This document shows, piece by piece, positions 22,046 through 60,262 of a stretch of 64,000 nt of DNA. Numbering within the stretch: position 1 is the first letter of the stretch; every line of letters begins with the position of its first letter. The notes below the pieces were generated by a model that saw only the letters and a list, made by a program, of their open reading frames with translations, did no database searches and was not told the origin of the DNA. The stretch lies in sequence record OP953026.1; one strand, given 5' to 3'. Made by a program: the position numbers and the translations under genes.

Positions 22046-22112
22046 ATAAATGCCTCCCTTCGGGGAGGCTTTATTTCGTATTAAAAAAAATTTGAGATTT
22101 ATATTACTAGTG
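22046..22112 (+). promoter_or_regulatory. terminator plus early promoter cassette
   Basis: GCCTCCC-TTCG-GGGAGGC (22052-22069) with TTTATTT, then TTTGAGATTTATATTAC (TATATTAC 22100-22107), the phiKZ early promoter motif. Confidence 0.8.
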
Positions 22113-44195: not shown

Positions 44196-44199
44196 CGAT

Positions 44200-44252: not shown

Positions 44253-44444
44253 ATGGATGATATTGAAAAGAAAATAGCCAAAATGGAAGCTCTATTTAGG
44301 TACCATGGTATTACCGTTGATATTAACCATAAGTTGAAACCTAATGCTAAGACAAAATTAACTCGTGCGGAAATTAACCGATTACAAATACAATATGATA
44401 AGCTTTTAGCTGAACGCGAAGAAGCTTTAAAAGCAATTCCTTAA
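44253..44444 (+). CDS. small coiled-coil protein
   Basis: 63 aa ORF. Confidence 0.6.
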   Translation: MDDIEKKIAKMEALFRYHGITVDINHKLKPNAKTKLTRAEINRLQIQYDKLLAEREEALKAIP

Positions 44445-44463
44445 ATTATTGAGGATTTATAAA

Positions 44464-44679
44464 ATGTTCAAGCGCGTTATGAGATATATTCGTGTTTTGA
44501 AATTAATTGTTATTTTCTATGTTAGGCGACAACTGGGTTTACACGATTATTGTACACGAAAAAATACAATTGCATTAGATCGTGAAAATAATAAACGTGT
44601 TCAAATAAATGCTATTTCTCGTAAAGTCGAAGAAGCATTATTTAAAGTTGAACTAGCTGCGATAATGAGTAAGCGGTAA
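44464..44679 (+). CDS. small basic protein
   Basis: GAGGA RBS before ATG 44464. Confidence 0.6.
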   Translation: MFKRVMRYIRVLKLIVIFYVRRQLGLHDYCTRKNTIALDRENNKRVQINAISRKVEEALFKVELAAIMSKR

Positions 44680-44685
44680 TGTTGT

Positions 44686-44739
44686 CATAAAGCCCTCCCT
44701 TCGGGGAGGGCTATTGCACTAAATTTTATTTGAGATCTA
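44686..44739 (+). repeat. 54-bp terminator-promoter cassette, copy 1
   Basis: CATAAAGCCCTCCCTTCGGGGAGGGCTATTGCACTAAATTTTATTTGAGATCTA, identical to 60158..60211. Confidence 0.92.
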
Positions 44740-44789
44740 CATTATAGATTAGCATATACTAATGGAAACATCTACATGAGGTAATTATC

Positions 44790-45089
44790 GTGAACGAAGC
44801 TATTATTTCACTGGACCGCAGAGGAGCCCATCATTTAGGATCTCGCGGTTATCCAATTAGATCAATTGGAGATGTTACAGTATTTGATTTGAATCATAAT
44901 CAACTATATCCCAAAATCCATTCTCTTAAAGATCAAAATCATGATGGATGGCACTCCATTAGTGTTGATGATGAAAATGGAGTAACAGCATATACGTTTG
45001 TTTTGAATATGGATCTTAATCTAGGATGGCTAAGACCTAAGCAGCCTAATGTTGGTGGTGGATATATCAAAATCAAATTTGAACAATAA
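44790..45089 (+). CDS. hypothetical protein
   Basis: 99 aa, GTG start with a GAGGT RBS. Confidence 0.7.
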   Translation: MNEAIISLDRRGAHHLGSRGYPIRSIGDVTVFDLNHNQLYPKIHSLKDQNHDGWHSISVDDENGVTAYTFVLNMDLNLGWLRPKQPNVGGGYIKIKFEQ

Positions 45090-45138
45090 GCGGTGTGTAC
45101 ACCGCTTTTATTCCGTGTTTATACTCAAAAGGTAATTT

Positions 45139-46272
45139 ATGATTATGTTTAAGTACTTAAAAAATGTTATTGATATTTTTAACAAACCAAAAAAGGTAGA
45201 TACATTAGAACAAAAGATAGCTAATCTAAATGATAAATACATCAGAGAAAATGTAGATGTTGATCAAATTGATATTCTGTCAGGTTATTTCACAGGAATG
45301 CTATCTGGGAAATTACATGATCGAAGTTTAGTATGGGGTTATTATACCAAAGAAACTAAGACATGGATGATTTATTTTGTTGAACAAAATTTTGATTCAT
45401 TCATGTATAAAGTAACTAATAATTCATTAGATATTATTAATCTAACTGATATAGAAGATCTTAAATTATTCTATTTCTCTAATGAACAATACATACCTGT
45501 AAATACACCAATCAATAGTGATCTAAATGTGGCTGTAATTTTCACATCAAAACCACTCACTAAGGATTTCATTGATCCATCTTTAATAGATCAAGTTAAA
45601 TCAGTTAATAGTAATTACAAGATTGTGATGGGTGGGTTATCTAATAATTCCAAATTTGATAGTAACCCAATAACTCTAATTGTAGAGTCTTATGAAGCAG
45701 ATGGTGATATCGTCGTAGTTGAATTAACTAATGGTACAACTGTGGCCATCAATAGAAAACTACTTAATATGTTTATGTATCAGTCAAGAATAGTTGATAC
45801 ATGTAATAACTCAAAAGTGCTTATAGATTTCAATGGACGGCTAAAGTTCACACCTATGGAGAATCATTTAGGTGGTATAAATAGTGCAATGCATTATTGG
45901 TCAAGTAATGGAATTATCAAAATTAGGTGTGACTATAGTATCATATTAGATCTAGATAAGTTTCCAGAGATTGTTAATCATATTGGAAACTGGATACATA
46001 TTGAAGCTAAAACAATTGCAAAAGTAATTGACTCGGTTGTGGTACCATACTTAACAAATGGGGAGCTTAGTACGCTCATTGTTGATTTAGATAATGTCGA
46101 TATTCAGTATCGTGGTTTAACATTATCTGGTAATATCAGCTTGCGTGATCGTTTAGATAAATGCAAAATCAAACTGATAAATCCATCAACTGATCCATAT
46201 GAGATACCTAGTCTAAATGGTAAACGTGATGTCCATGGTTTTTATAGAGTAGATGGAAGTTTATTAAAATGA
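45139..46272 (+). CDS. hypothetical protein
   Basis: 377 aa ORF, AAGGT RBS. Confidence 0.75.
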   Translation: MIMFKYLKNVIDIFNKPKKVDTLEQKIANLNDKYIRENVDVDQIDILSGYFTGMLSGKLHDRSLVWGYYTKETKTWMIYFVEQNFDSFMYKVTNNSLDIINLTDIEDLKLFYFSNEQYIPVNTPINSDLNVAVIFTSKPLTKDFIDPSLIDQVKSVNSNYKIVMGGLSNNSKFDSNPITLIVESYEADGDIVVVELTNGTTVAINRKLLNMFMYQSRIVDTCNNSKVLIDFNGRLKFTPMENHLGGINSAMHYWSSNGIIKIRCDYSIILDLDKFPEIVNHIGNWIHIEAKTIAKVIDSVVVPYLTNGELSTLIVDLDNVDIQYRGLTLSGNISLRDRLDKCKIKLINPSTDPYEIPSLNGKRDVHGFYRVDGSLLK

Positions 46273-46739
46273 TTAAATTAGTGATTAGTCTTTTTTATAA
46301 AATAGTTAATGAAAAGATGTCACCCACATATAAGAAATTAGTTACATTAGATAGAAATGGATACATTTTCAATAATAAACAAGATCTGTATTCGATTAAT
46401 CTTTCACTCTATCTTGAACTTATTCATTCAGTGACGAATGACTATATTGTTCAAGAAATTATAATGTGTCTAAGTTCTAAGCCACAAGCAGTGAAAGAAC
46501 TATTCCTTGAAGACCTAAGTACTAATAATCAACTACATTATTCATTGTTAGCTTGTAAAATAATGAATGAGAGGAAAATCATTAATAAGAATATTAATAA
46601 AGCGTGTGCTAAAAATATGGCTACTTTTTTAAAGGGCTATTTCCCAAGAGACTACTTCACTTGGTATAGTTGTCTCTATTTAGCGCTATCGGCTAAAAGT
46701 AAAGCTGAGAATAACAAAGTATCTGTTATTAATGAGTAA
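46269..46739 (+). CDS. hypothetical protein
   Basis: 156 aa, ATGA overlap. Confidence 0.65.
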   Translation: MIKLVISLFYKIVNEKMSPTYKKLVTLDRNGYIFNNKQDLYSINLSLYLELIHSVTNDYIVQEIIMCLSSKPQAVKELFLEDLSTNNQLHYSLLACKIMNERKIINKNINKACAKNMATFLKGYFPRDYFTWYSCLYLALSAKSKAENNKVSVINE

Positions 46740-46782
46740 ATACAATACTATGTAGTAGTATTTCTATTACGTACCTTTCGAG

Positions 46783-46820
46783 GCATATACTCCATGACTT
46801 ATGTTGTGGGGTATATGTGT
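46783..46820. terminator. hairpin, possible terminator
   Basis: CATATACTCCA...TGGGGTATATG inverted repeat. Confidence 0.5.
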
Positions 46821-46841
46821 TATAATGTTTAAGAGGTTAAA

Positions 46842-47189
46842 ATGCAAAAGCAACTAAATTCTGATGATCTAGATGTTCTTGACTCCTTTAATGCAGCATG
46901 GGAAATTGTTAAGGAAGAACATACTGATCTATTCTCACGTATAGCGATGATGGCTATTAATAAGTTAACTGATGATGATATCTCAGTCAATGATACTAAA
47001 GTAAGTATTCAACAAGTAGTTAATTTCCATGAGCGAATTCGAGATATCATTCCTAGCTCTGAGATTGTTAATCTTACGATTGTTAAAACTATCTTAGGTG
47101 AAATGAATGGTTGGTTAGAATTTGATGAACTTAATGAAGAACTATTTACAGCTTTAGGCAAAGCTTATAGCACTGTTAACTTTAATTGA
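46842..47189 (+). CDS. hypothetical acidic protein
   Basis: 115 aa, GAGGT RBS. Confidence 0.7.
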   Translation: MQKQLNSDDLDVLDSFNAAWEIVKEEHTDLFSRIAMMAINKLTDDDISVNDTKVSIQQVVNFHERIRDIIPSSEIVNLTIVKTILGEMNGWLEFDELNEELFTALGKAYSTVNFN

Positions 47190-47257
47190 TCATTAATATG
47201 AAAATTAAAACAATATAAGTGAGGCATGTGCCTCACTACATAGTAGAGGACTAACAC

Positions 47258-47590
47258 ATGCAGATTCAATTAGATCCATTAATGGTTTACCATGGTAGCA
47301 CTAGATCTTTATTTAATGAAGATTCTAGTTTAAATGTTGTTGATGTAAGGGGCATTCAATTAAATGCTGAAGGGATAGCTGATAACAAAAATTACTATTT
47401 TGATTATGGACGTAAGAAAGATGATGATGGTGAAATACTCACTATTTACGTACATGATCGAAATGTAGCTAAAGATTTTATTGTACTGTACGTTGAATTC
47501 CATTTAGGCACACATAAATTTCATACGTATGTACATCCACAATATCGGCATAAATTTCCAGTATTAGTACTGGAGTTATTATTCGTTTAA
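47258..47590 (+). CDS. hypothetical protein
   Basis: 110 aa, GAGGA RBS. Confidence 0.7.
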   Translation: MQIQLDPLMVYHGSTRSLFNEDSSLNVVDVRGIQLNAEGIADNKNYYFDYGRKKDDDGEILTIYVHDRNVAKDFIVLYVEFHLGTHKFHTYVHPQYRHKFPVLVLELLFV

Positions 47591-47778
47591 TATTAAGGGA
47601 CACTTAATGAGAGTCCCTATTTATTTTGCGTAAGTGTATATATGAAAAAGAAAGCATTTATTGAAACTAGTCTAAAATATTCAAACACCAAATATAACAA
47701 AGCGATCATCTGTAATGAAATAAAATTCAAACGGTACTAAACATACTAACCCTATGAATTAAAACGCACGGTGGTTGT

Positions 47779-48177
47779 ATGAAAATCTATGGTTCTTCTT
47801 TTCATGAGGTCACACTAGAATATGGAAAACCCTTTATACGCAATGGGGTTTTAAAACATTTACCTGATCTAGGTACACCAGACTTAGGATGGACTGATTT
47901 TAATATCCTTGAAATTATTCCAGGACCAGGTTATATCGATAAGAATACTCTAAACTTTTATAAAGAAAGAGATTGCTTATTTCCAGCAATCGTCAGGTTT
48001 ACTGTATTTGAAGAAGAGCGTAATCGTATTATATCAACAATTAATGTTGATCTGGCGAAAAAGGAATTAGAGTGGAATAAGACTGATCGTTTTTGGGAAA
48101 TCGAAAACTTTGCAATTAGATTCCAATTAACTCAAAATCCTTATTCAGTTTTATGGGCATCCAATGGATCACTATAG
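47779..48177 (+). CDS. hypothetical protein
   Basis: 132 aa, GGTGG RBS. Confidence 0.7.
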   Translation: MKIYGSSFHEVTLEYGKPFIRNGVLKHLPDLGTPDLGWTDFNILEIIPGPGYIDKNTLNFYKERDCLFPAIVRFTVFEEERNRIISTINVDLAKKELEWNKTDRFWEIENFAIRFQLTQNPYSVLWASNGSL

Positions 48178-48598
48178 GTGTCATATGCTTACAATGGTTC
48201 CGTTATACCCTGGTGTGAGAGGATATCTTGAAGACTCGGTATTTTCAAAGAATGGGATTAATGATATTGGTTATCATAAATGGCTATCCCCTAAACGAGT
48301 GGTAGGTCCAGATGGGCTAATCATTAGTGAGGTAAAGATAACTCCACGTATAGCCAGAATGGAAGGCGAAGTAATTCTTAAAGTATGGGATAAATGGCGA
48401 AGAGCCCAGCCTAAGCTAGTTGCTACTGTGTATATTGATCCTAAAGATAATTCATACAGGGTAGAAGTAGAGCCTTTTTATGCATGTCGTCGGATATTAC
48501 TTGAAGTGGATTTATGGGCTCAAGTAATACCTGGTGACCGTGCACCATTTGTAAATGACTCTGTAGATGGTACATGGGCATCAAGAGATATTATTTAA
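48164..48598 (+). CDS. hypothetical protein
   Basis: 144 aa, overlapping operon gene. Confidence 0.65.
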   Translation: MDHYRCHMLTMVPLYPGVRGYLEDSVFSKNGINDIGYHKWLSPKRVVGPDGLIISEVKITPRIARMEGEVILKVWDKWRRAQPKLVATVYIDPKDNSYRVEVEPFYACRRILLEVDLWAQVIPGDRAPFVNDSVDGTWASRDII

Positions 48599-48897
48599 TG
48601 CTTATACCAATTAAACTTCGTAAGACATTTAAAAGACTGGGCAAAAGACATTCTAAAAGAGTGTTGGCTGCCCAGTCATCTTTTCTGCCGTTTGGTGAAT
48701 TAACGTTGAGGAAGCAAAGAATGCCTAAGAAAAATAAAGAATATATTCTTGATGTTATTGATACTAATACTAAAGAACTACAGGCACAGATTAATACGTT
48801 AAGTGAACTTGTATGTGAACAACAGAAACAAATTAGTTTATTAAACAGAACACTAGTTGAGTTACAAGATAATTTGAAAAAAAAAGATAGGGATTAA
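48598..48897 (+). CDS. basic coiled-coil protein
   Basis: TAATG-coupled ATG 48598; C-terminal heptad pattern. Confidence 0.65.
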   Translation: MLIPIKLRKTFKRLGKRHSKRVLAAQSSFLPFGELTLRKQRMPKKNKEYILDVIDTNTKELQAQINTLSELVCEQQKQISLLNRTLVELQDNLKKKDRD

Positions 48898-48899
48898 AA

Positions 48900-49229
48900 A
48901 TGAATGTAGTTGATGAGTACCTACTTTTGACCTTATTCTGGATAGTTGTTTTATTTTCATTTATCCATGTATCGCAACGTTATAAACGAATTAAAGAAAA
49001 ACGAAGAGTTGATTTTCTAGTTAAAAGAGAATTAGTATATAATTATTTCAAAGTAACAGATCCTTCTGAATTAACTAATGATTCTATAGAAAGTATTATA
49101 CTTAAATTAATTGGTGATAATTATAGAAAATTAACAGATATGCAGAAATTAGTAATTAGGGCAGCAGCAGGTCGTGGTTATATGTATAACCCTAACAGAC
49201 CAATTGGCAAACATTTGAAATATATGTGA
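48900..49229 (+). CDS. single-pass membrane protein
   Basis: N-terminal YLLLTLFWIVVLFSFIHV helix. Confidence 0.7.
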   Translation: MNVVDEYLLLTLFWIVVLFSFIHVSQRYKRIKEKRRVDFLVKRELVYNYFKVTDPSELTNDSIESIILKLIGDNYRKLTDMQKLVIRAAAGRGYMYNPNRPIGKHLKYM

Positions 49230-49238
49230 GTTATAAAA

Positions 49239-49754
49239 ATGTCAGAAAACCGCCCGTTATATATAGCTGCTATTAAAAAAGATCTTTTAAAAACAACAGG
49301 TTTGTATAAACCTTATAATGATTCACCAATAGCTGTGGTTAGTAATGAAACCAGTAAGTGGCATGTAATGCTAAATATATTACGACATGGTTGGGAATGG
49401 ATTGAAATACCTGAAGGTGAGATTAAACAACCGGAAAGTTACCATGACTATGTTATTCTAGCATTAACCACTGTATTAACTGATACTTTAGATTATAAAA
49501 ATGATCCAAACTCTGATAAATATATCAAGCAAATAATCTGTACTGATATAGCACTAAAAGTTGAATATGATAAATTAATCAATGTGCTAGAGACAAGTAA
49601 CGAGTTAGATTTAGCTGATGAATACACCTTTACTAAACAAGGTAATCTCAGAGGATATTTCCATTATGATGAGTATTATGGTTTAGATGTACTGGCATGT
49701 GCATCTTATGTGATCTGTTCACATATCGAACTAACACCTAGAAATGTTAAATAA
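49239..49754 (+). CDS. hypothetical protein
   Basis: 171 aa ORF. Confidence 0.7.
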   Translation: MSENRPLYIAAIKKDLLKTTGLYKPYNDSPIAVVSNETSKWHVMLNILRHGWEWIEIPEGEIKQPESYHDYVILALTTVLTDTLDYKNDPNSDKYIKQIICTDIALKVEYDKLINVLETSNELDLADEYTFTKQGNLRGYFHYDEYYGLDVLACASYVICSHIELTPRNVK

Positions 49755-49766
49755 TAGGAACTACTG

Positions 49767-50366
49767 ATGAAAAAACGTACCGCTTATATCGATCGTGCTA
49801 AATTCCGAGATTTTCTAGCCGAGAAAAAAATTAGCGTAAGTAGCCGACAGTGGATTGAAAAGAGCCACCCAGATCATAAAGAATATTACAAGGCAATCCT
49901 AGATTACGTCGTATCTAATGTAAAATTCAAAGAAGAACGTTATATTGAAAAGGCAAATGAGGTTATTATTAATGGGTGTATTCGATATCATCTACCCATT
50001 CACGCTCAACGTGCACTAACTGTAGTTGAAGAAGAATTCATTAATAATGCTAGTCTTCAATTTACTTATCTGAATGATAATGATACTAATATTGCCAATA
50101 TTAACTTTGAAGAAGTTCTTGATGCACAAGTAACTGAGAATGAAACTGAACTAAGACAAAGTTGGGAATATGTCAATTGTGATATCAACCCATCAGAATA
50201 CTTTATTGATGTTGTTGATGTACCAGAAGAACTAATTCTTCGTCTATCTGTATTCCGTTTTGTACACAGTATCAAGAAACTGGAAGTAAAGGATAAGTTA
50301 GATCTTGCCGATGTTGTAGGTAAAGATCTAGTTATTGAAGATGGTAACGTTAAGGTTGTAGAATGA
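49767..50366 (+). CDS. hypothetical protein
   Basis: 199 aa, AGGA RBS. Confidence 0.75.
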   Translation: MKKRTAYIDRAKFRDFLAEKKISVSSRQWIEKSHPDHKEYYKAILDYVVSNVKFKEERYIEKANEVIINGCIRYHLPIHAQRALTVVEEEFINNASLQFTYLNDNDTNIANINFEEVLDAQVTENETELRQSWEYVNCDINPSEYFIDVVDVPEELILRLSVFRFVHSIKKLEVKDKLDLADVVGKDLVIEDGNVKVVE

Positions 50367-50443
50367 TTTAAGGCTATTTTAGTAGCTTTATATTCTGATC
50401 TTAGCAACCTAGGTACAACGTGATGCAATGTTTAACACACGTA

Positions 50444-50788
50444 ATGAAGTTAGTGGCCGTATTAAGTACGTTGTTATACGTATCAAACCCACTAGCTGCA
50501 TCGTTGGTAGTTGACGAGAATTACTGTAATGGTGTTGCACTTATAGCACATGCCACAGCAGAAGCACGTCAGCGTAAAACACCCATTTTACAATGGGAAG
50601 AAAACCTACGATCCCTAAAAGGGTACGGCGTGAAGAACAAAGATAACGTTCTTTACAATGTTCTCCCAGCAGCAATTAAAGAGGTGCACGTTGTGTATTC
50701 ACGTAGACAAAGCCCACGTGATGCATACGTTACATCATTTAAAACCTGTATGGATAACAACTACGGTAAAGCTGTGGTTGTAAAATAA
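50444..50788 (+). CDS. predicted secreted protein with a Cys pair
   Basis: Signal-like MKLVAVLSTLLYVSNPLAA; NYC...ARQ...TC pattern. Confidence 0.65.
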   Translation: MKLVAVLSTLLYVSNPLAASLVVDENYCNGVALIAHATAEARQRKTPILQWEENLRSLKGYGVKNKDNVLYNVLPAAIKEVHVVYSRRQSPRDAYVTSFKTCMDNNYGKAVVVK

Positions 50789-50790
50789 AT

Positions 50791-50817
50791 ACCAGCCCTT
50801 CGGGGCTGGTTTATTTC
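50791..50817 (+). terminator. intrinsic terminator (UUCG loop)
   Basis: ACCAGCCC-TTCG-GGGCTGGT followed by TTATTT. Confidence 0.85.
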
Positions 50818-50844
50818 ATCTAGATGAGAATCTGTGGGTTGCAA

Positions 50845-51141
50845 ATGTATAAAGTATTTGTTATATCAATGATAACACTAACGGCTATATCAACATGTGT
50901 AACTTTCATTATTAATATAAAAAATCATTATATTCACTGGATGGGTGTTTATAAGGTTAGATATGTATTAGATAAAATGCCCAATGGCATAAGTTATTTT
51001 TTCTATCAAAATGCTGTCCAAGACATTATAGATAAAGAATCATCTAAAATAACAAATCAACATATTTTTACATCTTTTATTTACGATATCAACTCATTGA
51101 TTATATTAAAATGTAATAATAGGGAAACAGCAAATGAATGA
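50845..51141 (+). CDS. single-pass membrane protein (paralogue set B)
   Basis: ORF track 50824..51141; N-terminal hydrophobic helix from MYKVFVISMITL. Confidence 0.65.
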   Translation: MYKVFVISMITLTAISTCVTFIINIKNHYIHWMGVYKVRYVLDKMPNGISYFFYQNAVQDIIDKESSKITNQHIFTSFIYDINSLIILKCNNRETANE

Positions 51142-51424
51142 TATCATGACAGTAATTATAGGTATTTTGTTTCTGATTATAATGATGGCTTTAATTAACT
51201 GGGGTTATTATGCCATCAAACACACGATAAAGTGTAACAGGCTTTATAAAGAAGCACTATCAATTATTGACAATATGAGTGATGGTTTATCTGAATACCA
51301 GTATACAGTAGCTATTGGACGTTTACGTAAAAAGGCATACTCTATCGACCATTTAACTGCTGTTAAAATGTTTGAAGCATTAGACTTAGTTATTAAAGAT
51401 AAGTCAAGAAAGAAAAATAAATAA
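51134..51424 (+). CDS. single-pass membrane protein (paralogue set B)
   Basis: IMTVIIGILFLIIMMALINWG helix. Confidence 0.7.
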   Translation: MNDIMTVIIGILFLIIMMALINWGYYAIKHTIKCNRLYKEALSIIDNMSDGLSEYQYTVAIGRLRKKAYSIDHLTAVKMFEALDLVIKDKSRKKNK

Positions 51425-51425
51425 G

Positions 51426-51492
51426 CATAAATAGGAGAGCTATTTAGCTCTCCTTTATTGCATTAAATTTTTTTTGAAATCTATATTACATA
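51426..51492 (+). promoter_or_regulatory. terminator plus early promoter cassette
   Basis: AGGAGAGC-TATTTA-GCTCTCCT followed by TATTGCATTAAATTTTTTTTGAAATCTATATTAC (core 51482-51489). Confidence 0.8.
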
Positions 51493-51525
51493 TTTGGTCA
51501 AGTCATATCAAAATAGGTAGTTATA

Positions 51526-51699
51526 ATGCTAGCATTACATTCACTACTATTATTAGTTATAGTGATTTGTTATATAATTCATAAGTGGTTGTGGTATACT
51601 TTCAATATGTTTAAACTAAAAGACATTATTAAAAATAAAGACAATTTAACTAATGATGAACTATTAAAATTACTCATTGATAAAATAAAGGCAACCTAA
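51526..51699 (+). CDS. small single-pass membrane protein (57 aa), not in the ORF track
   Basis: MLALHSLLLLVIVICYIIHKWLWY...IDKIKAT*; AGGT RBS; first gene after an early promoter; TAATG-coupled to the next gene. Confidence 0.65.
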   Translation: MLALHSLLLLVIVICYIIHKWLWYTFNMFKLKDIIKNKDNLTNDELLKLLIDKIKAT

Positions 51700-52166
51700 T
51701 GTATCCATTCTTTACAGGTAATGAGAAAGTTACTGTAGATGTTCTTGATGATAAACATAATCTACATAGAAGTTGGACTGATTATAAACATCCCATCACG
51801 ACGCGTGTGGACGGTAAACTAACCAATGTGTGGTATAAAGTTGAACCACCGATGAGTGCTAAGGATATTGAAAATAACTTTACAATTGACAAAGATAAAG
51901 TTAAATTATCTAATCGTTTGCACCAAGCTTTAGATGCAACGTTGATTAAAAATGAATTAGAAGAGTTTAACAAATTAATTGATCTATGCGTAAAACATGT
52001 TAATTCAGTTAGTATTCATCTAGGTCTTACTATTTGGAAATTAGCAGATACTGTAAAATATGAAAAAGCAGATTTAAAGAAACTATTTAATGCACATTAT
52101 ACCAAATCTACTGAACTTGTAAAAGAAAAGAATATAGTGCCCTCAGTAGAAGATATCTTCCTATAA
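51699..52166 (+). CDS. hypothetical protein
   Basis: 155 aa ORF. Confidence 0.7.
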   Translation: MYPFFTGNEKVTVDVLDDKHNLHRSWTDYKHPITTRVDGKLTNVWYKVEPPMSAKDIENNFTIDKDKVKLSNRLHQALDATLIKNELEEFNKLIDLCVKHVNSVSIHLGLTIWKLADTVKYEKADLKKLFNAHYTKSTELVKEKNIVPSVEDIFL

Positions 52167-52188
52167 TTTATTTAAAGGTAATACAAAT

Positions 52189-53097: not shown

Positions 53098-53351
53098 ATG
53101 CAACTTTAGCAATTCTTTTTAGTAGTATCAGTATCGCTGGTTATCAAGCCAATGGTGCATCGCAGTCAACCGCTGAGTTCTCTGACATGGCTACTTGTTT
53201 TAGCGCGATTGAGCGCATTCAAAAACTAGCTAAAGCAAGTGCTATTCGTAATAATGTAGAGACTGTAAAAATCAGTGATGGTGTTCTATTACGTTATTTT
53301 TCTTCTAGTACTAGTAAAGTAGAACATACTCTAATCTGTGTAAATAAATAG
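53094..53351 (+). CDS. small predicted secreted protein
   Basis: 85 aa with a hydrophobic N-terminus and two Cys. Confidence 0.6.
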   Translation: MNATLAILFSSISIAGYQANGASQSTAEFSDMATCFSAIERIQKLAKASAIRNNVETVKISDGVLLRYFSSSTSKVEHTLICVNK

Positions 53352-53359
53352 GTACGGAT

Positions 53360-54067
53360 ATGTCTGAGAAAATGTATTTATCTTTTTCTGGAATTGGACA
53401 CAATGACGTAATCAAACAAGATCTTAATGGATTCGTTCCAATGGATGTATCAACTATTGATAATGAAGTAGCTAATCGATTATTTTACACTCCATTCAAT
53501 AGTTCTGAACCAGGTACCTCATTACCTAATGTTGCTAATGTGGTATTCAAGGTATTACCTATCCATATCGAGGATAACACTATCTGTGTTTTAGATAGTT
53601 GTTCTAGTACCGAATACTCATTGAATGACTTAGTTGATACCAGTGTCTCATCATTAGAAACATATGGTCCATTAATAGATTTACGTAGTAGTGATCCAAT
53701 TGAGACATATGCTAATCAGGCAGTGTATACTTGGTTAAATAAGAATATCTGTGATATCGAATTTGAAGTACATGGCGGGCTGCAAGTGCAACTAACTGCT
53801 GACCAAGTGCGTTCCAATGTTAATGCATTTGTAGCAGGTATTGATCTTGACATCGACGATAAATTGATGGTATATGTGGTGATTAAAATCAATGATCGTT
53901 TATACGATGCTTGGTCTAGTCAACATGTGGTGGAACCATTAACAATGTATCATGTACAAGGTGGTCATGAGCCTATTGTCTATAGTGAAACCCATATTGA
54001 AAATAGCCTATTGCGATATGCTAAAGAGAAAGGTTGGGCTGAAATTTTGACTCGTATTGGTCTGTAA
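53360..54067 (+). CDS. hypothetical protein
   Basis: 235 aa ORF. Confidence 0.7.
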   Translation: MSEKMYLSFSGIGHNDVIKQDLNGFVPMDVSTIDNEVANRLFYTPFNSSEPGTSLPNVANVVFKVLPIHIEDNTICVLDSCSSTEYSLNDLVDTSVSSLETYGPLIDLRSSDPIETYANQAVYTWLNKNICDIEFEVHGGLQVQLTADQVRSNVNAFVAGIDLDIDDKLMVYVVIKINDRLYDAWSSQHVVEPLTMYHVQGGHEPIVYSETHIENSLLRYAKEKGWAEILTRIGL

Positions 54068-54131
54068 TAAAAATACTTTTAATAGACTAATATTATAGGC
54101 AAAATACTGGCCGATTGGTTAGTTGCGCTTA

Positions 54132-54151
54132 GGGGGTCCTTCGGGACTCCC
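54132..54151 (+). other. UUCG hairpin without U tract
   Basis: GGGGGTCC-TTCG-GGACTCCC just upstream of the AGGAGG RBS of 54173. Confidence 0.55.
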
Positions 54152-54172
54152 GTATGCCGTCTAGGAGGTTTT

Positions 54173-54466
54173 ATGTATACAGTTACACTTGAACAAGTAG
54201 GACACCGTATACAGTCTAGTTTAAGTGCTTTTGTAATTAGACCGTTTGAAAATACCATTACGCATAATGATACGTCTTATTACTTGATTATGGGTAAAGA
54301 TGATTTCGATAACATGCACATGGAATGGCGAGATGTAGTTGTAGCTGATAGTCAAGCAGTTATAGTTGCTACATACACTCCATCGAAAAACTCATTTAAT
54401 CTTGTAAAAAATGAATTAGGTATTCCAGTTAATATCAAATACAAACGGATAGAGGTTGATCTATGA
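54173..54466 (+). CDS. hypothetical protein
   Basis: 97 aa, AGGAGG RBS. Confidence 0.7.
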   Translation: MYTVTLEQVGHRIQSSLSAFVIRPFENTITHNDTSYYLIMGKDDFDNMHMEWRDVVVADSQAVIVATYTPSKNSFNLVKNELGIPVNIKYKRIEVDL

Positions 54467-54493
54467 TTACCAGTAAGGTTAGAGGAATGAAGT

Positions 54494-54694
54494 ATGGATC
54501 GTCTTGATGAAAGAATCACATTCAGTGTAAAGTCGTACAAAATTTTCAATGCTCTCTCCCATGGCCGAGTTCGGGCATTGATTATTAACTTTAAAGATGG
54601 TAAGGGTACGATCGTATCTATTAGTGATGATCGCCGCCATGATAAACATCTCTGGTTCAACTGTGGACTAGTAGACAATCCGAGGATCAAGTAA
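54494..54694 (+). CDS. small hypothetical protein
   Basis: 66 aa, TAATG-coupled to thyA. Confidence 0.6.
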   Translation: MDRLDERITFSVKSYKIFNALSHGRVRALIINFKDGKGTIVSISDDRRHDKHLWFNCGLVDNPRIK

Positions 54695-56160
54695 TGGAAC
54701 AATATCTTAATTCAATCCGTTTAGTTAAAGAACACGGTGTACATAAAGGTGACCGTACTGGTACTGGTACTCAGAGCATGTTTGGTCAACAAGAACGTTA
54801 TAGTCTGCGTAATAATCGGCTACCAGTTGTAACCACCAAGAAGATTCATCTAGCTTCTGTAATTCATGAATTGTTCTGGATGCTGTCAGGTGATACTAAG
54901 GTGGATTACCTGATCGCTAATGGTGTACGCATCTGGAACGAGTGGGTTAAACCTGAAACCGCAGTATATGAGCCGATGACCGATGAGGCCGTTCTTAAAG
55001 CAGTAACTGCCCTCATTGGTGCCCCATTCGTAATGTACTTACATTGTATGAACGATGACTCTACTCCATTCATTGAGACTGTAGCGGAATTCGAGTCGGG
55101 TATGACTCCAGAGACTATTCAGGCCTTCTGGGATGAATATCCAGTTAACCGTGAGGAAATCCAATACATCATTGGAGTTAGCGTAACGTCGTGGAATAGG
55201 TTCGCTACTGAAGGGTTCGATGAAGCCAAAAATCCTGAAGGTATTCGTGCTGAATATAACAAGCGACTGTATCGTGCTTTGATGCATAAAGAACCAGAGC
55301 GTCTGGTCGGCGGCGATCTAGGTGCTGTTTACGGTAAGACATGGCGTAATCTTGAAGACACTCGTGTAATCCCTAAATATGAGTGGTTTGATTATGAGAA
55401 GCGTGGTTTTGACTTCGTGGCGGATATCCCAGGTACAACCATGGAAACCGATCGATGCGTGGTTACTCGACGTATCGACCAAATCCAAGACATCATCGAT
55501 CAACTTCGCACCAACCCGGATTCTCGTCGGATCATTGTTTGTGCATGGGCGCCACATCTTATTGATGAGCAGGCACTCCCACCTTGCCACGCATTTATTC
55601 AGTTCTGGACCCGTGAACTGACCGTAGATGAACGAGTGCAAGCTCTAGACCAAACCCAGTTCGAAGCTGATGCTTATCATGATAAGATTAGTGGTGAGAT
55701 TACTCGTGGTCAACCTCCATTCGATAGTGCTGAGCAGGTTAAAGCACTTCTGCGTGTCTGTCGTGGTTATGAAAAGGCTACAGATGAAGCAGTAGTAGAA
55801 TGGCTGGATCAACATGGTGTTCCTAAACGTGCATTGAGTTGCCAACTCTATCAAAGATCTTGTGATACTTTCTTAGGAAAACCCTTTAATATCACGTTCT
55901 ACAGTCTGCTGACCCATATGTTAGCTAACCAAATGAATATGATTGCTGAAGAGTTTATCTGGACTGGTGGTGATGTACATATTTACTCTAACCACCAAGA
56001 ACAAACTGATCTTCAATTAACTCGTGAACCGAAGGTTCTACCTACCATCCGTTTTAAAGAAGAAGCTATTGGTAAAGATATTCGGGAAATTGGTGTAGAT
56101 GATTTTGTTATCGAGAACTATGAATATCATCCACACATTGCTGGTAAAGTTGCTGTTTAA
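54694..56160 (+). CDS. thyA: thymidylate synthase (ThyA) with large insertions
   Basis: DRTGTGT, IWNEW, catalytic ALPPCH, LYQRSCD, and HIYSNH motifs. Confidence 0.96.
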   Translation: MEQYLNSIRLVKEHGVHKGDRTGTGTQSMFGQQERYSLRNNRLPVVTTKKIHLASVIHELFWMLSGDTKVDYLIANGVRIWNEWVKPETAVYEPMTDEAVLKAVTALIGAPFVMYLHCMNDDSTPFIETVAEFESGMTPETIQAFWDEYPVNREEIQYIIGVSVTSWNRFATEGFDEAKNPEGIRAEYNKRLYRALMHKEPERLVGGDLGAVYGKTWRNLEDTRVIPKYEWFDYEKRGFDFVADIPGTTMETDRCVVTRRIDQIQDIIDQLRTNPDSRRIIVCAWAPHLIDEQALPPCHAFIQFWTRELTVDERVQALDQTQFEADAYHDKISGEITRGQPPFDSAEQVKALLRVCRGYEKATDEAVVEWLDQHGVPKRALSCQLYQRSCDTFLGKPFNITFYSLLTHMLANQMNMIAEEFIWTGGDVHIYSNHQEQTDLQLTREPKVLPTIRFKEEAIGKDIREIGVDDFVIENYEYHPHIAGKVAV

Positions 56161-56168
56161 CATAAAAC

Positions 56169-56197
56169 GCCTCCCTTCGGGGAGGCTTTATTTTCCT
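56169..56197 (+). terminator. intrinsic terminator (UUCG loop)
   Basis: GCCTCCC-TTCG-GGGAGGC followed by TTTATTTT. Confidence 0.85.
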
Positions 56198-56214
56198 TTG
56201 GAGGTATACTTCTT

Positions 56215-56604
56215 ATGAACATTATCGAACTTAAACGTCAACTTTAACTCGCCGAGGAACTGATGGGTATAGACCCTGCTCCACTTAAAATCGGTATCGC
56301 TGGTGATCGAGTTGATACTGCAACTCGATGCAGTATTTTCAATGGGAAAGATCCAGGTAGGGAATTCAGTATCAGTCTTGGAATTGTTAGCCGAAAGCAA
56401 TTGCTTGAACACACTGACGATGCATTGATTCTCAATAAGCCCGAGAAAGAGCCTATTGTCATCCCATACAAAGCTATCTACGACATGCCTACTTCTCTTG
56501 AATTCGAGGAAGAACTGATCTCGGAAGGATGGTTGGTCTACAATATTCTCAGGACACCGATATTCATGTGGCTTGATGCTGGTAAAACAGAAAAACTTAA
56601 ATAA
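56215..56604 (+). pseudogene. hypothetical gene with in-frame premature TAA
   Basis: GGAGGT RBS, ATG 56215, TAA at 56245-56247, then the same frame continues into the 56263..56604 ORF. Confidence 0.6.
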
Positions 56605-56615
56605 GGAAAAATGAA

Positions 56616-57128
56616 ATGACTATGTCTACTCTTGGTTGGGATTTAAATGGCGGTGCTCTGGACACGCTATATCAACTAGTTCGTCATGGTTTCCGTGAAC
56701 CAGGTGAGATCCCATCTAAAGCTGGCGCCGTCGATCTTGAACAGCTTCGACTGATTGATTACTTCCCGGATGGTTCCGGCATTGAGTTGACTCTATTGGG
56801 TTCTGTTGTTGGTGATCACATTGTCAACCATAAAGAACTGATCGGTTTCAAGATTGACTTCGCTGAACGTTGTGGTAATGGTGAACTTGACGGTAAACCT
56901 ATTCGGGTACTGAGTGACCATGATGACAACATCGTCTTTGTTCGTGATCTGATTCAAACTGCGGGCTTCAAGATCTCTGATCTGACCAGCGAGCACGATT
57001 ATGCTGTATTCCAGATCAATGATCCAGATACTGATGGAAAGTATATTACTCTTTATCCAGGTGACATTGTTGTCAAGACGGGATCTGGTTATATTGTTCA
57101 CACCACTACGGAAAACCAGAGTCGTTAA
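56616..57128 (+). CDS. hypothetical protein
   Basis: 170 aa with an N-terminal GEIPSKAG..DL winged-helix-like motif. Confidence 0.7.
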   Translation: MTMSTLGWDLNGGALDTLYQLVRHGFREPGEIPSKAGAVDLEQLRLIDYFPDGSGIELTLLGSVVGDHIVNHKELIGFKIDFAERCGNGELDGKPIRVLSDHDDNIVFVRDLIQTAGFKISDLTSEHDYAVFQINDPDTDGKYITLYPGDIVVKTGSGYIVHTTTENQSR

Positions 57129-57186
57129 ACAGTATATCGGGAGTCCATTTGGACTCCCTTTTATATCGTAAACATGTGAGGTCCAA

Positions 57187-57909
57187 ATGTTTGTAAAAAA
57201 GTGATCTACCCAGTAATATTGAAAATATCAAAGTTGGTGAGAAAGTTATCTCCCAATGGTTCGCTTTACCCAATTATACTGAGATGAAGAAGCTCTATTT
57301 GGATGATCTTCCAGCTCTCGGTTACCATCAATCAATGGCTGATTTTGAAGCAGCTGTCAGGAAATATACCACGGCATTCCTTATCGACAATCTACTGATG
57401 GATACTGCTGGTAAGGCTATCAACCCGATCTCACCTTACTTCCTCGATAAGGTCAACGAGCGCTTGGCAGAACTCGGTGATCCATTGTATCGAGTTACAT
57501 GCATTATATCTCGATGGCCAAACAAAACAAAATGCGTTGGTTGTCAGATGAGAAGGTTCGGATGAAGAAATACTTCTATTCATTGCGTCCTCTCCTTGCA
57601 GCATTGTGGGTTGAGACTAGCCATGAACATCCGCCCATGGTTTTCCATGAACTGTTACCTATCCTGTCAGATCCTATCTTGTATAAACGTATCCAAGAAT
57701 TGGTTAACGCTAAGGTTGGAGCTACTGAATAGGATCTGATTGATCGTTGCCCAGTTCTGGATCGGTTCATTGACTTCCATCTGGCTAAAGAGAAACCCAA
57801 CTTCGGTAAATATAAACGTCCGGACATCTATGCACTTACCGACCTAGCCTGGCATTTTGTTGACCAGTACAAGCTCGACACATTCGTAAAACTACCTGGT
57901 ACCGAATGA
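57187..57909 (+). pseudogene. fragmented predicted nucleotidyltransferase (PF10127/RlaP-like C-terminal half)
   Basis: Two frameshifts (A6 run 57195-57200; about 57495) and a TAG at 57730-57732 break one reading path. The HYISMA...KKYFYSLRPLLAALW...PPMVFHEL...PVLDRFI motif is family-typical. Confidence 0.6.
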
Positions 57910-57969
57910 AGAAAATATTAGTCAATAAAGAAAAAAGTCTAATACCATCTTATTAAAAGGAAATATACT

Positions 57970-58464
57970 ATGTTATTTAAAAAAGAAGTATGTATTGAGA
58001 ATATCCTAGTACTAGAAAAACTATACATGGTTACTAATCGTAAGGATAATATCTATCCTAATCCAGAGGTAACTTATGAAGATATTAAGAAATTTACCAA
58101 AACCTATGGTAAAATTCCAATGGACTTCTTAGGTCCATTATTACATGAGATTGTTGAACGGGAAGATTATATTCTAAAAGAAAAAGAAGCTCAAGAATAC
58201 ATTGATAAAATGCCTATTATTGTAGAACACGATAATAGTCGTATTGTTAATGAATACACTATCTTGAATTATATTATTCCAGTTACTACTCATCCTAATC
58301 TTAATAATCGATCATATACCATCAATCTTTATAAGTATGTCGACTGCCTAGAAAATACTACCAAAGCATTAAAACATTTTAGATGGACAAATAATCAAGA
58401 TTATAATTTCTTAAAGACGGTGCATGGCCGTTTACTAGATATTCTTGATATCATGGAAAGTTAA
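57970..58464 (+). CDS. hypothetical protein
   Basis: 164 aa, AAGGA RBS. Confidence 0.7.
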   Translation: MLFKKEVCIENILVLEKLYMVTNRKDNIYPNPEVTYEDIKKFTKTYGKIPMDFLGPLLHEIVEREDYILKEKEAQEYIDKMPIIVEHDNSRIVNEYTILNYIIPVTTHPNLNNRSYTINLYKYVDCLENTTKALKHFRWTNNQDYNFLKTVHGRLLDILDIMES

Positions 58465-58507
58465 TATGTTAAAAACATATTCATCTAATATACTCCATTA
58501 CATACGT

Positions 58508-58538
58508 TACCCTACTCCATATTGGGGTAGGGGTATTA
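58508..58538 (+). terminator. hairpin/terminator
   Basis: ACCCTACTCC-ATATT-GGGGTAGGG(G)T. Confidence 0.55.
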
Positions 58539-58553
58539 AGGTGGGGTATAAAT

Positions 58554-58847
58554 ATGTCAAGCAACAAACTATCTGCACAACTCAATCATCATCACAATAC
58601 TCGTATAGTTAATTATTATGTCTCACTAGCCGCAAGTCGTTATGGCGACACCAATCCTTCAGCAAAAGCTAAAGGTAAATGGCGTAAACATAATCCATTT
58701 AATTGTGGTAGGTCTCGTTGTATGCTATGTGGTAATCCCCGTAAGCGTTGGAATAGACTTACTCTTAATGAGATTAAAATTAATATTTCATTAAAAGAAC
58801 AATTAACTGAAATTAGTAGAGACATTGCTGAGCTAAATGAGGATTGA
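58554..58847 (+). CDS. basic protein with C-x4-C-x2-CGNPR putative zinc motif
   Basis: CGRSRCMLCGNPRK...TLNE pattern typical of a phage hypothetical family. Confidence 0.65.
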   Translation: MSSNKLSAQLNHHHNTRIVNYYVSLAASRYGDTNPSAKAKGKWRKHNPFNCGRSRCMLCGNPRKRWNRLTLNEIKINISLKEQLTEISRDIAELNED

Positions 58848-58918
58848 ACAATGTATGAAGAGTACGAAGCAATTTAATAGTTTAGATTAACCATTCGAAA
58901 TAAATTTGGAATAATTAA

Positions 58919-59041
58919 ATGAAAGTTAAAAATAAGCAACAGCCTAAATTTGTCAATCTAGCTACTATGCAAGCCGCATGGCGTTTAAATAACGCAGAGC
59001 TTAAAGCTAAGCGGGAAGCTAAAGAAAAGCAAAAAGAATAA
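58919..59041 (+). CDS. small basic peptide (40 aa), not in the ORF track
   Basis: MKVKNKQQPKFVNLATMQAAWRLNNAELKAKREAKEKQKE*, followed by a terminator. Confidence 0.45.
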   Translation: MKVKNKQQPKFVNLATMQAAWRLNNAELKAKREAKEKQKE

Positions 59042-59058
59042 AACTATTTGATTGCATA

Positions 59059-59092
59059 AAGAGAGAGGATAAATTCCTCTCTCTTTTTATGT
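59059..59092 (+). terminator. intrinsic terminator
   Basis: AGAGAGAGGA-TAAAT-TCCTCTCTCT followed by TTTT. Confidence 0.75.
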
Positions 59093-59161
59093 TGTTTTAT
59101 AACTTATATTTAGTCTAAAAGATAATTATGGAATAAACAAAAAATATCCTAACTGATATGT

Positions 59162-59692
59162 TTGTTCTTTATTCTTGACTTATTGAACCCAAAGAGGATT
59201 TTTAAAATGACTGATATTTTAAATAAAGATAACTTCTTTTCATGGGGTGCTGTAGTAGGTGGTGCACTATTACAGTATTTTGAAAATGGTAAACTTGAAG
59301 GTGGTTATAGTATATTTAAATTCAGTGATGATGTTAATGGCCTGGTAATTACAGGTGGTATAACGCATCGAAAAAATATCGGGATCCTGTGTGGTCAAGG
59401 TGATGATGAAGATCTATTTTTAGTATTCGTCATAAGTAATACTGAAAAGCCACATGCAGTATGGTATTACGATATTTATGTAGATGATGAAAGTAGTATT
59501 TGTTTTACAAATTCTTCACCTACCAGTGGTCGTATCTTTAAATCAGATACTGATGGAAATAATGACCTGTCGATAAGTCAATTACTTAAAGTAGTTAAAT
59601 ACTTAGTAGATGAACGAGTTCGTTTAAATAAAAATATAGTTAATTCACCAGGTTATAAAATCATTGAAGAAGATAAAGACTTTCAACTATAA
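59162..59692 (+). CDS. hypothetical protein
   Basis: 176 aa (the start may be the downstream ATG with a GAGGA RBS). Confidence 0.7.
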   Translation: MFFILDLLNPKRIFKMTDILNKDNFFSWGAVVGGALLQYFENGKLEGGYSIFKFSDDVNGLVITGGITHRKNIGILCGQGDDEDLFLVFVISNTEKPHAVWYYDIYVDDESSICFTNSSPTSGRIFKSDTDGNNDLSISQLLKVVKYLVDERVRLNKNIVNSPGYKIIEEDKDFQL

Positions 59693-59713
59693 TAAGTATT
59701 TTACAAAGTTACC

Positions 59714-59790
59714 ATAAATACCTCCCTTCGGGGAGGTTTTATATTGTGTTTTTTTGTATTCAAACATATTTAAACAGTATATTACAACAG
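59714..59790 (+). promoter_or_regulatory. terminator plus early promoter cassette
   Basis: ACCTCCC-TTCG-GGGAGGT with TTTA, then ATTTAAACAGTATATTAC (core 59778-59785). Confidence 0.85.
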
Positions 59791-59821
59791 TGAATTCAAT
59801 CTTGAAAAAAGGAGATATACC

Positions 59822-60151
59822 ATGAATATGTCCACTATTTCTACTGGTATTCTGGTGCTGGGCGGACTGGCATTTGGTTATAGCATTTGCAATGGTGTGC
59901 ATTCAGTTTATAAAGAACTGGCTATGGAAATCTATTATAAAAAGCAATTGACAAAAGTAAAAGAGAAACTCACCGAATATGAAAACAAATATGTAGAAGT
60001 ACCCTCAACAGCTGAAGTAAATATTTATATCGAACCTCTACTAACTGAGGCCCTTAATAAACTAGATCGATTCACCTATGGGTGTTTCCTAGCTGAGGTT
60101 GAACAACATATCGATTTTATTATTGATAATTACCGTGTAGTTAACAGATAA
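59822..60151 (+). CDS. early single-pass membrane protein; candidate phiKZ gp241 orthologue
   Basis: 109 aa, N-terminal TM helix (ILVLGGLAFGYSI), own early promoter, AGGAG RBS. Gene count from thyA fits recalled gp241. Confidence 0.55.
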   Translation: MNMSTISTGILVLGGLAFGYSICNGVHSVYKELAMEIYYKKQLTKVKEKLTEYENKYVEVPSTAEVNIYIEPLLTEALNKLDRFTYGCFLAEVEQHIDFIIDNYRVVNR

Positions 60152-60157
60152 TAAGAG

Positions 60158-60211
60158 CATAAAGCCCTCCCTTCGGGGAGGGCTATTGCACTAAATTTTA
60201 TTTGAGATCTA
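60158..60211 (+). repeat. 54-bp terminator-promoter cassette, copy 2
   Basis: Identical to 44686..44739; continues into a consensus TATATTAC (60210-60217). Confidence 0.92.
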
Positions 60212-60262
60212 TATTACATGTGTGTATTACAAAATCAAATTAATGTGTCGAGGTTTTAATAG

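What the first reader, a model, noticed from the sequence alone, without database searches (positions are those of the whole stretch)
44686..60217. Perfect 54-bp terminator-promoter cassette duplicated 15.5 kb apart (PeSL-like)
Seen: 44686-44739 and 60158-60211 are identical (UUCG terminator, spacer and promoter upstream element), while the flanking genes are unrelated. Immediately after, copy 2 has consensus TATATTAC and copy 1 has the degenerate TACATTAT. A looser relative lies at 51426-51490 and another at 22046-22107. Known: T4-like PeSL (promoter-early-stem-loop) repeats mediate recombinational shuffling and excision of accessory gene modules. Inference: these direct repeats may let the 15.5-kb block (including sspB and thyA) be deleted, circularised or swapped, and may explain how accessory genes arrive with ready-made expression signals.
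Basis: partly seen in the sequence, partly recalled or inferred. Interest (0 to 1): 0.65.

Follow-up and report, generated by a model that had tools for sequence, protein, structure and literature searches.

The report
Recombining terminator-promoter cassettes in phiKZ-like phage
Two identical 54-base stop-and-start transcription signals in a giant Pseudomonas phage are real, and the second copy is a local recombination hot spot beside a gene that triggers a bacterial defence. Nothing shows that the 15.5 kb between the copies is ever cut out or moved as a block.

Summary
The window is bases 1-64000 of Pseudomonas phage pPA-N1803-4At.2 (Phikzvirus). The repeat is confirmed: 44686-44739 equals 60158-60211, and it is the longest regulatory repeat in the 280-kb genome. 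Each copy is a UUCG hairpin terminator followed by a phiKZ-type early promoter. Copy 1 lies before gp218.1 and copy 2 before gp242.

All 47 close relatives keep both copies about 15-15.7 kb apart. None lacks the block, and copy 1 is essentially invariant.

Copy 2 varies in patches, and each patch matches a sister cassette of the same genome:
- phage fnug carries the promoter half of a cassette 6.7 kb downstream;
- Flora_bin_1 carries the copy-1 core.

Copy 2 is also a mosaic junction:
- gp241 upstream, the published Juk-defence activator, is 75% identical to phiKZ's protein, while gp242 downstream is 100% identical;
- in fMGyn-Pae01 a different divergent block starts inside copy 2.

So the cassettes do recombine, by short-patch conversion and allele exchange, much like the PeSL cassettes of T4-like phages. 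Excision or circularisation of the 15.5-kb block is unsupported. Fixed deletions in relatives used 10-11-bp microhomologies inside genes instead.

The scan has reported similar cassette shuffling in other jumbo phages. This is a modest new member of a known kind.

The parts
44686..44745 (+). Cassette c1, between gp218 and gp218.1. Hairpin terminator at 44691-44712, T-rich upstream promoter element, and a degenerate core TACATTAT at 44738-44745.
   Evidence: Sequence, fold. It is identical in 32 of 47 relatives over +/-45 nt. In the others that were checked, the single difference lies outside the cassette.
60158..60217 (+). Cassette c2, between gp241 and gp242. Hairpin at 60163-60184 and consensus core TATATTAC at 60210-60217. 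It is a variable recipient of conversion patches and a mosaic junction.
51427..51489 (+). Cassette c3, before gp230.2. Hairpin at 51433-51454 and core at 51482-51489. Same promoter subtype. It shares a 30-nt exact repeat with c4, which lies at genome position 66891, outside the window.
22046..22107 (+). A looser terminator plus early-promoter cassette of another promoter subtype.
56165..56201 (+). thyA terminator (hairpin 56169-56186). The left edge of the KTN4-clade divergent module begins within 15 nt after it.
59058..59109 (+). Terminator hairpin at 59058-59086. The gp239 presence/absence difference (344 nt extra in phiKZ) starts 23 nt after it.
56201..60209 (+). Hypervariable early module. 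It differs from phiKZ by replacement or by 5-29% divergence, and is bounded by the thyA terminator on the left and c2 on the right.
59822..60151 (+). gp241 homolog. In phiKZ this protein is the activator of the Juk defence. The allele here is 75% identical to phiKZ's at the protein level.
   Evidence: Role from 10.1101/2025.11.23.690004 and PMC13434031.
60263..60700 (+). gp242 homolog, 100% identical to phiKZ's protein. First gene driven by c2.
44790..45089 (+). gp218.1 homolog, the first gene downstream of c1.

Best explanation
The two 54-mers are paralogous regulatory cassettes of a phiKZ-like phage. Each holds an intrinsic terminator for the upstream early operon, followed directly by an early promoter of the type read by the virion RNA polymerase for the next operon.

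They belong to a small subfamily of four cassettes: c1 at 44686, c3 at 51427, c2 at 60158, and c4 at genome position 66891. Their near-identity is kept up, and reshuffled, by ectopic homologous recombination among these cassettes.

Copy 2 is the active site. It receives short conversion patches from its sisters. It also serves as the crossover point where divergent alleles of the neighbouring accessory genes are exchanged between related phages, notably gp241, the Juk-defence activator.

The perfect 54/54 match is the state of one clade only (KTN4, AttikonH10, FBPa36 and this phage). Most relatives share a 45-nt exact core.

What is shown: the anatomy, the patch variants with their donors, and the two mosaic junctions. 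What is inferred: the recombination mechanism (conversion versus copy-choice), promoter activity at these two sites, and any link to selection by Juk.
For: Identity and uniqueness of the pair.

The components match published phiKZ elements. These are a conserved hairpin terminator motif and about 32 AT-rich early promoters read by the virion RNA polymerase (PMC8244752, PMC10914365).

Copy 2 occurs in at least six states among about 45 near-identical genomes, while c1, c3 and c4 stay constant:
- In fnug, five clustered changes turn the promoter half of c2 into the exact c4 38-mer. fnug holds two copies of that 38-mer; four other genomes hold one.
- In Flora_bin_1, four changes within 11 nt give the c1 state at 60209, 60212, 60217 and 60219.

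Mosaic junctions at c2:
- Against phiKZ, dense differences stop at 60146. Only 60162, 60163 and 60209 differ inside the cassette, and the next 100 nt are identical.
- gp241 is 75% identical at the protein level and gp242 is 100%.
- In fMGyn-Pae01, an independent divergent block starts at 60200, inside c2, and runs to about 60541.

Other module edges abut terminators at 56201 and 59109.
Against: - Only one record supports each clean conversion event. Flora_bin_1 is a concatenation of contigs that break in the cassette, so its c2 state rests mainly on one contig end.
- The single-base state at 60209 could be a point mutation.
- The fMGyn variant may simply be a divergent allele rather than a conversion.
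- Selection for viable recombinants would also place junctions in intergenic regions without any special role for the cassette.
- Genome-wide, the link between junctions and hairpins is weak: 5 of 30 alignment ends lie within 30 nt of a hairpin against 1.2 expected, and most sharp divergence steps lie elsewhere.
- No transcription start data for these two sites could be read, because the supplementary tables are not held.
Confidence: 0.7

Rival explanations
1. Crossing-over between the two direct repeats deletes, circularises or transposes the whole 15.5-kb block (gp218.1 to gp241, including the SspB-like gene and thyA), and this is a significant route of gene flux.
For: The cassettes demonstrably pair with each other. 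In phiKZ the block lies in a region reported as largely non-essential, orf184-304. Repeats of only 10-11 bp have produced fixed deletions in relatives, so a 54-bp repeat should recombine at some rate. Such a deletion would remove gp241, the Juk activator.
Against: None of 47 relatives lacks, duplicates or relocates the block. The spacing is 15,002-15,713 bp in five genomes checked directly. Copy 1 is never a mosaic or indel junction. The shared-core unitig sits at about twice the flanking depth in three of four runs, with no sign of amplification. That test used contigs only and is blind to rare forms.
Confidence: 0.1
2. There is no recombination role. The identity is left over from an old duplication and preserved purely by purifying selection on terminator and promoter function. 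The variants of copy 2 are ordinary mutations or alleles.
For: Both halves are functional motifs that are conserved even in other genera: PhiPA3 and PA1C have similar cassettes. Copy 1 is invariant.
Against: Sister cassettes with the same function differ at many positions. In fnug, five of six differences within 901 nt cluster in about 20 nt and reproduce c4 exactly. In Flora, four clustered changes reproduce c1. Independent point mutations would not do this.
Confidence: 0.15
3. Assembly artefact: one copy was written over the other during assembly or polishing of this record.
For: The record has a 127-bp overlap of its own ends. Repeats of this size break short-read assemblies.
Against: Three independently deposited genomes (KTN4, AttikonH10, FBPa36) have the identical copy 2 with the same flanks.
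Confidence: 0.03

Closest known systems
PeSL (promoter-early stem-loop) cassettes of T4-like phages (Arbiol et al. 2010, PMC2839356; Comeau et al. 2014, PMC4122927)
   Same: A compact intergenic unit that joins a stem-loop terminator to an early promoter. It is repeated in the accessory (hyperplastic) early region in front of small genes of unknown function. It is found at the edges of modules that differ between close relatives, and homologous exchange takes place between copies.
   Different: The promoter is the phiKZ virion-RNA-polymerase type (TATATTAC core), not sigma-70. The hairpin always precedes the promoter. What is seen here is short-patch conversion and allele exchange at one copy, not loss or gain of the DNA between two copies. 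Mini-circles are untested. Many indels in this phage group do not use the cassettes.
Published phiKZ regulatory elements: early promoters and the conserved intrinsic terminator motif (Wicke et al. 2020, PMC8244752; Putzeys et al. 2024, PMC10914365)
   Same: A GC-rich hairpin with a tetraloop, and an AT/T-rich element followed by an extended -10-like core. Early operons on the + strand. The distance from the core to the start codon fits the reported 31-40-nt leaders.
   Different: Those papers, as far as I could read them, treat the elements as transcription signals only. They do not mention the near-identical pair, conversion between copies, or mosaic junctions (one search found no 'recombination' in the text). 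After the stem, c1 and c2 read CTATTGCA rather than the motif's YTTAT.
Morons and conserved boundary sequences at module joints of lambdoid and other phages (general knowledge; morons are cited in PMC10914365)
   Same: Accessory genes come with their own promoter and terminator, and exchange joints lie in short conserved intergenic sequences.
   Different: Here the conserved joints are paralogous copies within one genome, and they also convert each other.

Membership tests
PeSL-type mobile regulatory cassette | Composite of a stable stem-loop and an early promoter within one intergenic unit of at most about 100 bp | tested here: met
   A 9-bp UUCG hairpin followed 25 nt later by the early-promoter core.
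PeSL-type mobile regulatory cassette | Sigma-70-like promoter used by the host RNA polymerase | tested here: not met
   The core TATATTAC with a T-rich upstream element is the phiKZ early motif, which the virion RNA polymerase reads. This makes it an analogue of PeSL, not a homologue.
PeSL-type mobile regulatory cassette | Concentrated in hyperplastic accessory regions, in front of small genes of unknown function | tested here: met
   About 16 hairpin-promoter cassettes, nearly all on the + strand of early regions. The neighbouring genes have no Pfam match. The region is reported as largely non-essential in phiKZ.
PeSL-type mobile regulatory cassette | Insertion, deletion and replacement breakpoints between close relatives coincide with the cassettes | tested here: inconclusive
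   Yes at c2 (two independent blocks), at the thyA terminator and at hairpin 59058. No at c1. No for the FBPa36 and PizzaParty deletions or the gp237 replacement. Genome-wide, 5 of 30 ends lie near hairpins against 1.2 expected.
PeSL-type mobile regulatory cassette | Recombination between copies yields mini-circles or deletions | not testable with these tools
   Only Logan contigs are available, and they break at the repeat.
phiKZ early (virion RNA polymerase) promoter | Extended -10-like core TATATTAC preceded by a T-rich element | tested here: met
   Copy 2 has an exact core. Copy 1 has two mismatches (TACATTAT), so its activity is uncertain. PhiPA3's related cassette has TACATTAC.
phiKZ early (virion RNA polymerase) promoter | Mapped transcription start just downstream | not testable with these tools
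   The supplementary start-site tables of PMC8244752 and PMC10914365 are not held. The RNA runs are contigs only.
phiKZ conserved intrinsic terminator motif (Putzeys 2024) | C-rich/G-rich stem, short loop, then YTTAT | tested here: inconclusive
   The stem and loop fit. The tail is CTATTGCA instead of YTTATKYYGT.

The most novel reading that the evidence does not exclude
Cassette c2 is a built-in exchange point that lets phiKZ-like phages replace or lose the gene just upstream, gp241, which triggers the bacterial Juk defence. In clades where c2 is a perfect repeat of c1 (or of c4, as in fnug), recombination between cassettes would constantly produce a small fraction of gp241-less or gp241-swapped genomes. 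The phage population would then be pre-adapted to hosts that carry Juk.
Probability: 0.15. Interest if true: 0.6.

Novelty: new member of a known kind. Interest (0 to 1): 0.4.

Why it matters
The short stop-and-start signals of phiKZ-like jumbo phages turn out to be more than transcription punctuation. They are also places where the genome exchanges sequence with itself and with relatives, as in T4-like phages, even though the polymerase and promoter are quite different.

The most active site lies directly beside gp241, a protein that a widespread bacterial defence (Juk) recognises. The divergent gp241 allele of the KTN4 clade may therefore have been swapped in through this junction, and that clade's sensitivity to Juk is now a simple thing to test.

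For phage engineering and therapy, the result flags repeats that can destabilise constructs. It also explains why short-read assemblies of these phages break at this position.

Tried and rejected
- IMG/VR and metagenome scans for the 26-mer spanning the hairpin and spacer found nothing, so no environmental variants were available.
- Flora_bin_1 first looked like a recombinant with new genes upstream of c2. It is in fact a concatenation of non-adjacent contigs that end in the cassette, so it is not evidence for module shuffling. Only its copy-2 sequence state was used. Its contig ends cannot strictly exclude that they are junction forms, but one converted c2 is the simpler reading.
- Public reads are all stored as contigs that break at the repeat. 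The 15.1-kb contig that starts in c1 and ends in c2 is what a de Bruijn assembly produces for a block flanked by repeats. It is not a circle.
- A strict genome-wide scan for sharp divergence steps missed the two junctions of interest and showed most steps are not near hairpins. I therefore do not claim a genome-wide rule.
- Supplementary start-site tables were not available, and Ceyssens 2014 could not be fetched.
- The whole genome was not held as G000. It was rebuilt from the public record in pieces.
Full report
**Identity of the window.** The window is bases 1-64000 of Pseudomonas phage pPA-N1803-4At.2 (OP953026.1, genus Phikzvirus, 280,431 bp). The best matches are KTN4, W10-2, fnug, AttikonH10 and FBPa36 at 99.5-99.7%, and phiKZ at about 97%. 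Against the phiKZ annotation, copy 1 lies between PHIKZ218 and PHIKZ218.1, and copy 2 lies between PHIKZ241 and PHIKZ242.

**The observation.** 44686-44739 and 60158-60211 are identical, and the match is 58/59 to 44744/60216.
- The first difference is C44740 against T60212. This gives TACATTAT at 44738-44745 and the consensus TATATTAC at 60210-60217.
- Each copy begins with a 9-bp GC-rich stem closed by a UUCG loop, at 44691-44712 and 60163-60184. The fold energy is about -22 kcal/mol, far below shuffled controls.
- A BLAST search of the cassette against the whole record finds only this pair matching over the full length. All other hits share only the hairpin or only the promoter part.
- Among exact direct repeats of the genome, the 54-mer ranks third. 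The longer two are a 127-bp overlap of the record's own ends and a 57-bp repeat outside the window. Most of the remaining repeats of 24 nt or more are also terminators or early promoters.

**What the unit is.** Published transcript mapping of phiKZ describes two elements. One is about 32 early promoters, read by the virion RNA polymerase, with an extended -10-like core and a T-rich upstream element. The other is a conserved hairpin terminator motif present in 61 terminators (PMC8244752 and PMC10914365).
- Both halves of the cassette fit these descriptions. The tail after the stem (CTATTGCA) departs from the published YTTAT.
- A simple scan finds about 16 units of a hairpin followed by an early-promoter core in this genome, nearly all on the + strand.
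- The promoters fall into subtypes by their upstream 30 nt. Copies c1 and c2 belong with c3 (51427-51489) and c4 (genome position 66891, outside the window). c3 and c4 themselves share a 30-nt exact repeat.
- I could not read start-site tables for these two positions. Promoter and terminator activity at c1 and c2 is therefore inferred from the motifs and from the 46-nt distance between core and start codon, which fits the reported 31-40-nt leaders.

**Test of the block-excision idea.**
- Flanks of copy 1 (44300-45200) are at least 99.4% identical in 47 records. Flanks of copy 2 are present in the same 47.
- In five genomes checked directly, the two copies lie 15,002-15,713 bp apart.
- No record lacks, duplicates or relocates the block.
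- Copy 1 with 45 nt on each side is 100% identical in 32 records. Twelve records have one mismatch. In phiKZ and fMGyn-Pae01, the two of these I read, it lies in gp218 outside the cassette.
- The deletions that do exist in relatives did not use the cassettes. FBPa36 lost 60969-66783 across an 11-bp microhomology inside gp243. PhiPizzaParty lost 299 bp across a 10-bp microhomology.
- Public sequencing runs are stored only as contigs, which break at the repeat. They show a 45- or 48-nt shared unitig, at about twice the flanking depth in three of the four runs and about equal in the fourth. They say nothing about rare junctions.

The specific inference is therefore unsupported. It is not excluded as a rare event.

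**Evidence that the cassettes recombine.** c1, c3 and c4 are constant in every genome examined. Copy 2 occurs in at least six states:

| State of copy 2 | Where found |
|---|---|
| 54/54 identical to c1 | Only in this phage, KTN4, FBPa36 and AttikonH10 |
| As above, but A at 60209 | W10-2 |
| Differs at 60162, 60163 and 60209, leaving a 45-nt exact core shared with c1 | About 36 records, including phiKZ and SL2 |
| phiKZ-type 5' end with C at 60209 | Run X5 |
| Promoter half replaced by the c4 sequence | fnug |
| 3' end replaced by the c1 sequence | Flora_bin_1 |

- In fnug, both flanks are identical to this phage, with 0 and 1 differences in gp241 and gp242. Five changes clustered in about 20 nt turn the promoter half into the exact sequence of c4. 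A pattern search finds two copies of that 38-mer in fnug and one in each of four other genomes.
- In Flora_bin_1, four changes within 11 nt (60209, 60212, 60217, 60219) give the c1 state, followed by normal copy-2 downstream sequence.

Independent point mutation does not explain such patches. They are the signature of ectopic gene conversion, or copy-choice, between paralogous cassettes 6.7 and 15.5 kb away.

One caveat applies. Flora_bin_1 is a concatenation of non-adjacent contigs that end in the cassette. Its state rests on contig ends. It agrees with an assembly break at a 55-nt repeat.

**Copy 2 as a mosaic junction.**
- Compared with phiKZ, this phage is 99.4% identical from 41500 to 56201. 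It is then replaced or 5-29% divergent up to copy 2, and it is nearly identical again afterwards.
- At base resolution, dense differences stop at 60146. Only 60162, 60163 and 60209 differ within the cassette, and the next difference is at 60310.
- The protein upstream (gp241) is 75% identical to phiKZ's. The one downstream (gp242) is 100% identical.
- The left edge of this divergent module lies within 15 nt after the thyA terminator hairpin. Inside the module, the gp239 presence/absence difference begins 23 nt after another terminator hairpin.
- In fMGyn-Pae01, which has the phiKZ-type gp241, an unrelated divergent block begins at 60200, inside copy 2, and runs to about 60541.

Copy 2 has therefore been a crossover point at least twice.

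Other edges in the same region fall inside genes. For example, the N-terminal half of the gp237 nucleotidyltransferase is replaced by a 170-aa ORF found only in the six KTN4-clade genomes. Genome-wide, only 5 of 30 alignment ends lie within 30 nt of a perfect hairpin (1.2 expected from random positions), and most sharp divergence steps are elsewhere. The cassettes are favoured joints in this hypervariable stretch, not a general rule.

**Biological context.** In phiKZ, gp241 is the early protein that the JukA sensor of the Juk defence recognises. A transposon insertion in orf241 lets the phage grow on a host carrying Juk. gp237-242 and most of orf184-304 are reported as non-essential (10.1101/2025.11.23.690004 and PMC13434031). 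A divergent gp241 allele bounded by copy 2 is therefore a plausible product of selection for escape. This is inference, and I did not test it.

**Comparison with known systems.** The closest described system is the PeSL cassette of T4-like phages. It is a stem-loop plus early promoter, repeated in hyperplastic regions, found at indel and replacement joints, and able to form mini-circles (PMC2839356, PMC4122927). The present cassettes work like PeSLs in their layout and as exchange joints. They differ in three ways: they use a phage-polymerase promoter, what is documented here is short-patch conversion and allele exchange at one copy, and circles are untested. Earlier follow-ups of this scan reported similar cassette-mediated shuffling in other jumbo phages, including a giant Pseudomonas phage (s1-162026). 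I did not re-test those.

**Verdict.**
- The finding is a new member of a known kind, of moderate interest.
- The most useful new points are the conversion donors, the hot-spot behaviour of copy 2, and its position beside the Juk activator gene.

Noticed in passing
window 1-127 and record 280305-280431: The record's two ends are an identical 127-bp overlap. This looks like an assembly circularisation leftover, so the unique genome length would be 280,304 bp.
   Followed up: no
window 56616-57128 and 57499-57732: In this clade the gp237 RlaP-type nucleotidyltransferase survives only as a C-terminal fragment (Pfam PF10127, profile positions 127-204 of 249). Its front half is replaced by a 170-aa ORF with no Pfam match, found only in the six KTN4-clade genomes.
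   Followed up: partly
L016 12407-14876 (fMGyn-Pae01), equivalent to window 55634-55864: thyA of fMGyn-Pae01 is annotated in two pieces around a 1.2-kb insert that carries an 890-nt ORF. It resembles an intron or homing-endonuclease insertion with diverged flanks.
   Followed up: no
window 60958-60968 and genome 66784-66794; window 43958-43967 and 44266-44275: FBPa36 has a 5.8-kb deletion and PhiPizzaParty a 299-bp deletion. Each is joined at a direct microhomology of 10-11 bp inside coding sequence.
   Followed up: yes
L017 (PQ533667.1 Flora_bin_1): The deposited 26-kb 'partial genome' is a chain of five non-adjacent genome pieces in mixed orientation. Two of its joints lie in cassette c2.
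   Followed up: yes
genome 92890-92946 and 96182-96238 (outside the window): A 57-bp exact direct repeat, the longest internal one. It lies beside indel junctions between this phage and phiKZ at 92910 and 94950-96060.
   Followed up: no
window 51461-51490 and genome 66923-66952: Cassettes c3 and c4 share a 30-nt exact promoter repeat. They form a second near-identical pair within the same promoter subtype.
   Followed up: partly
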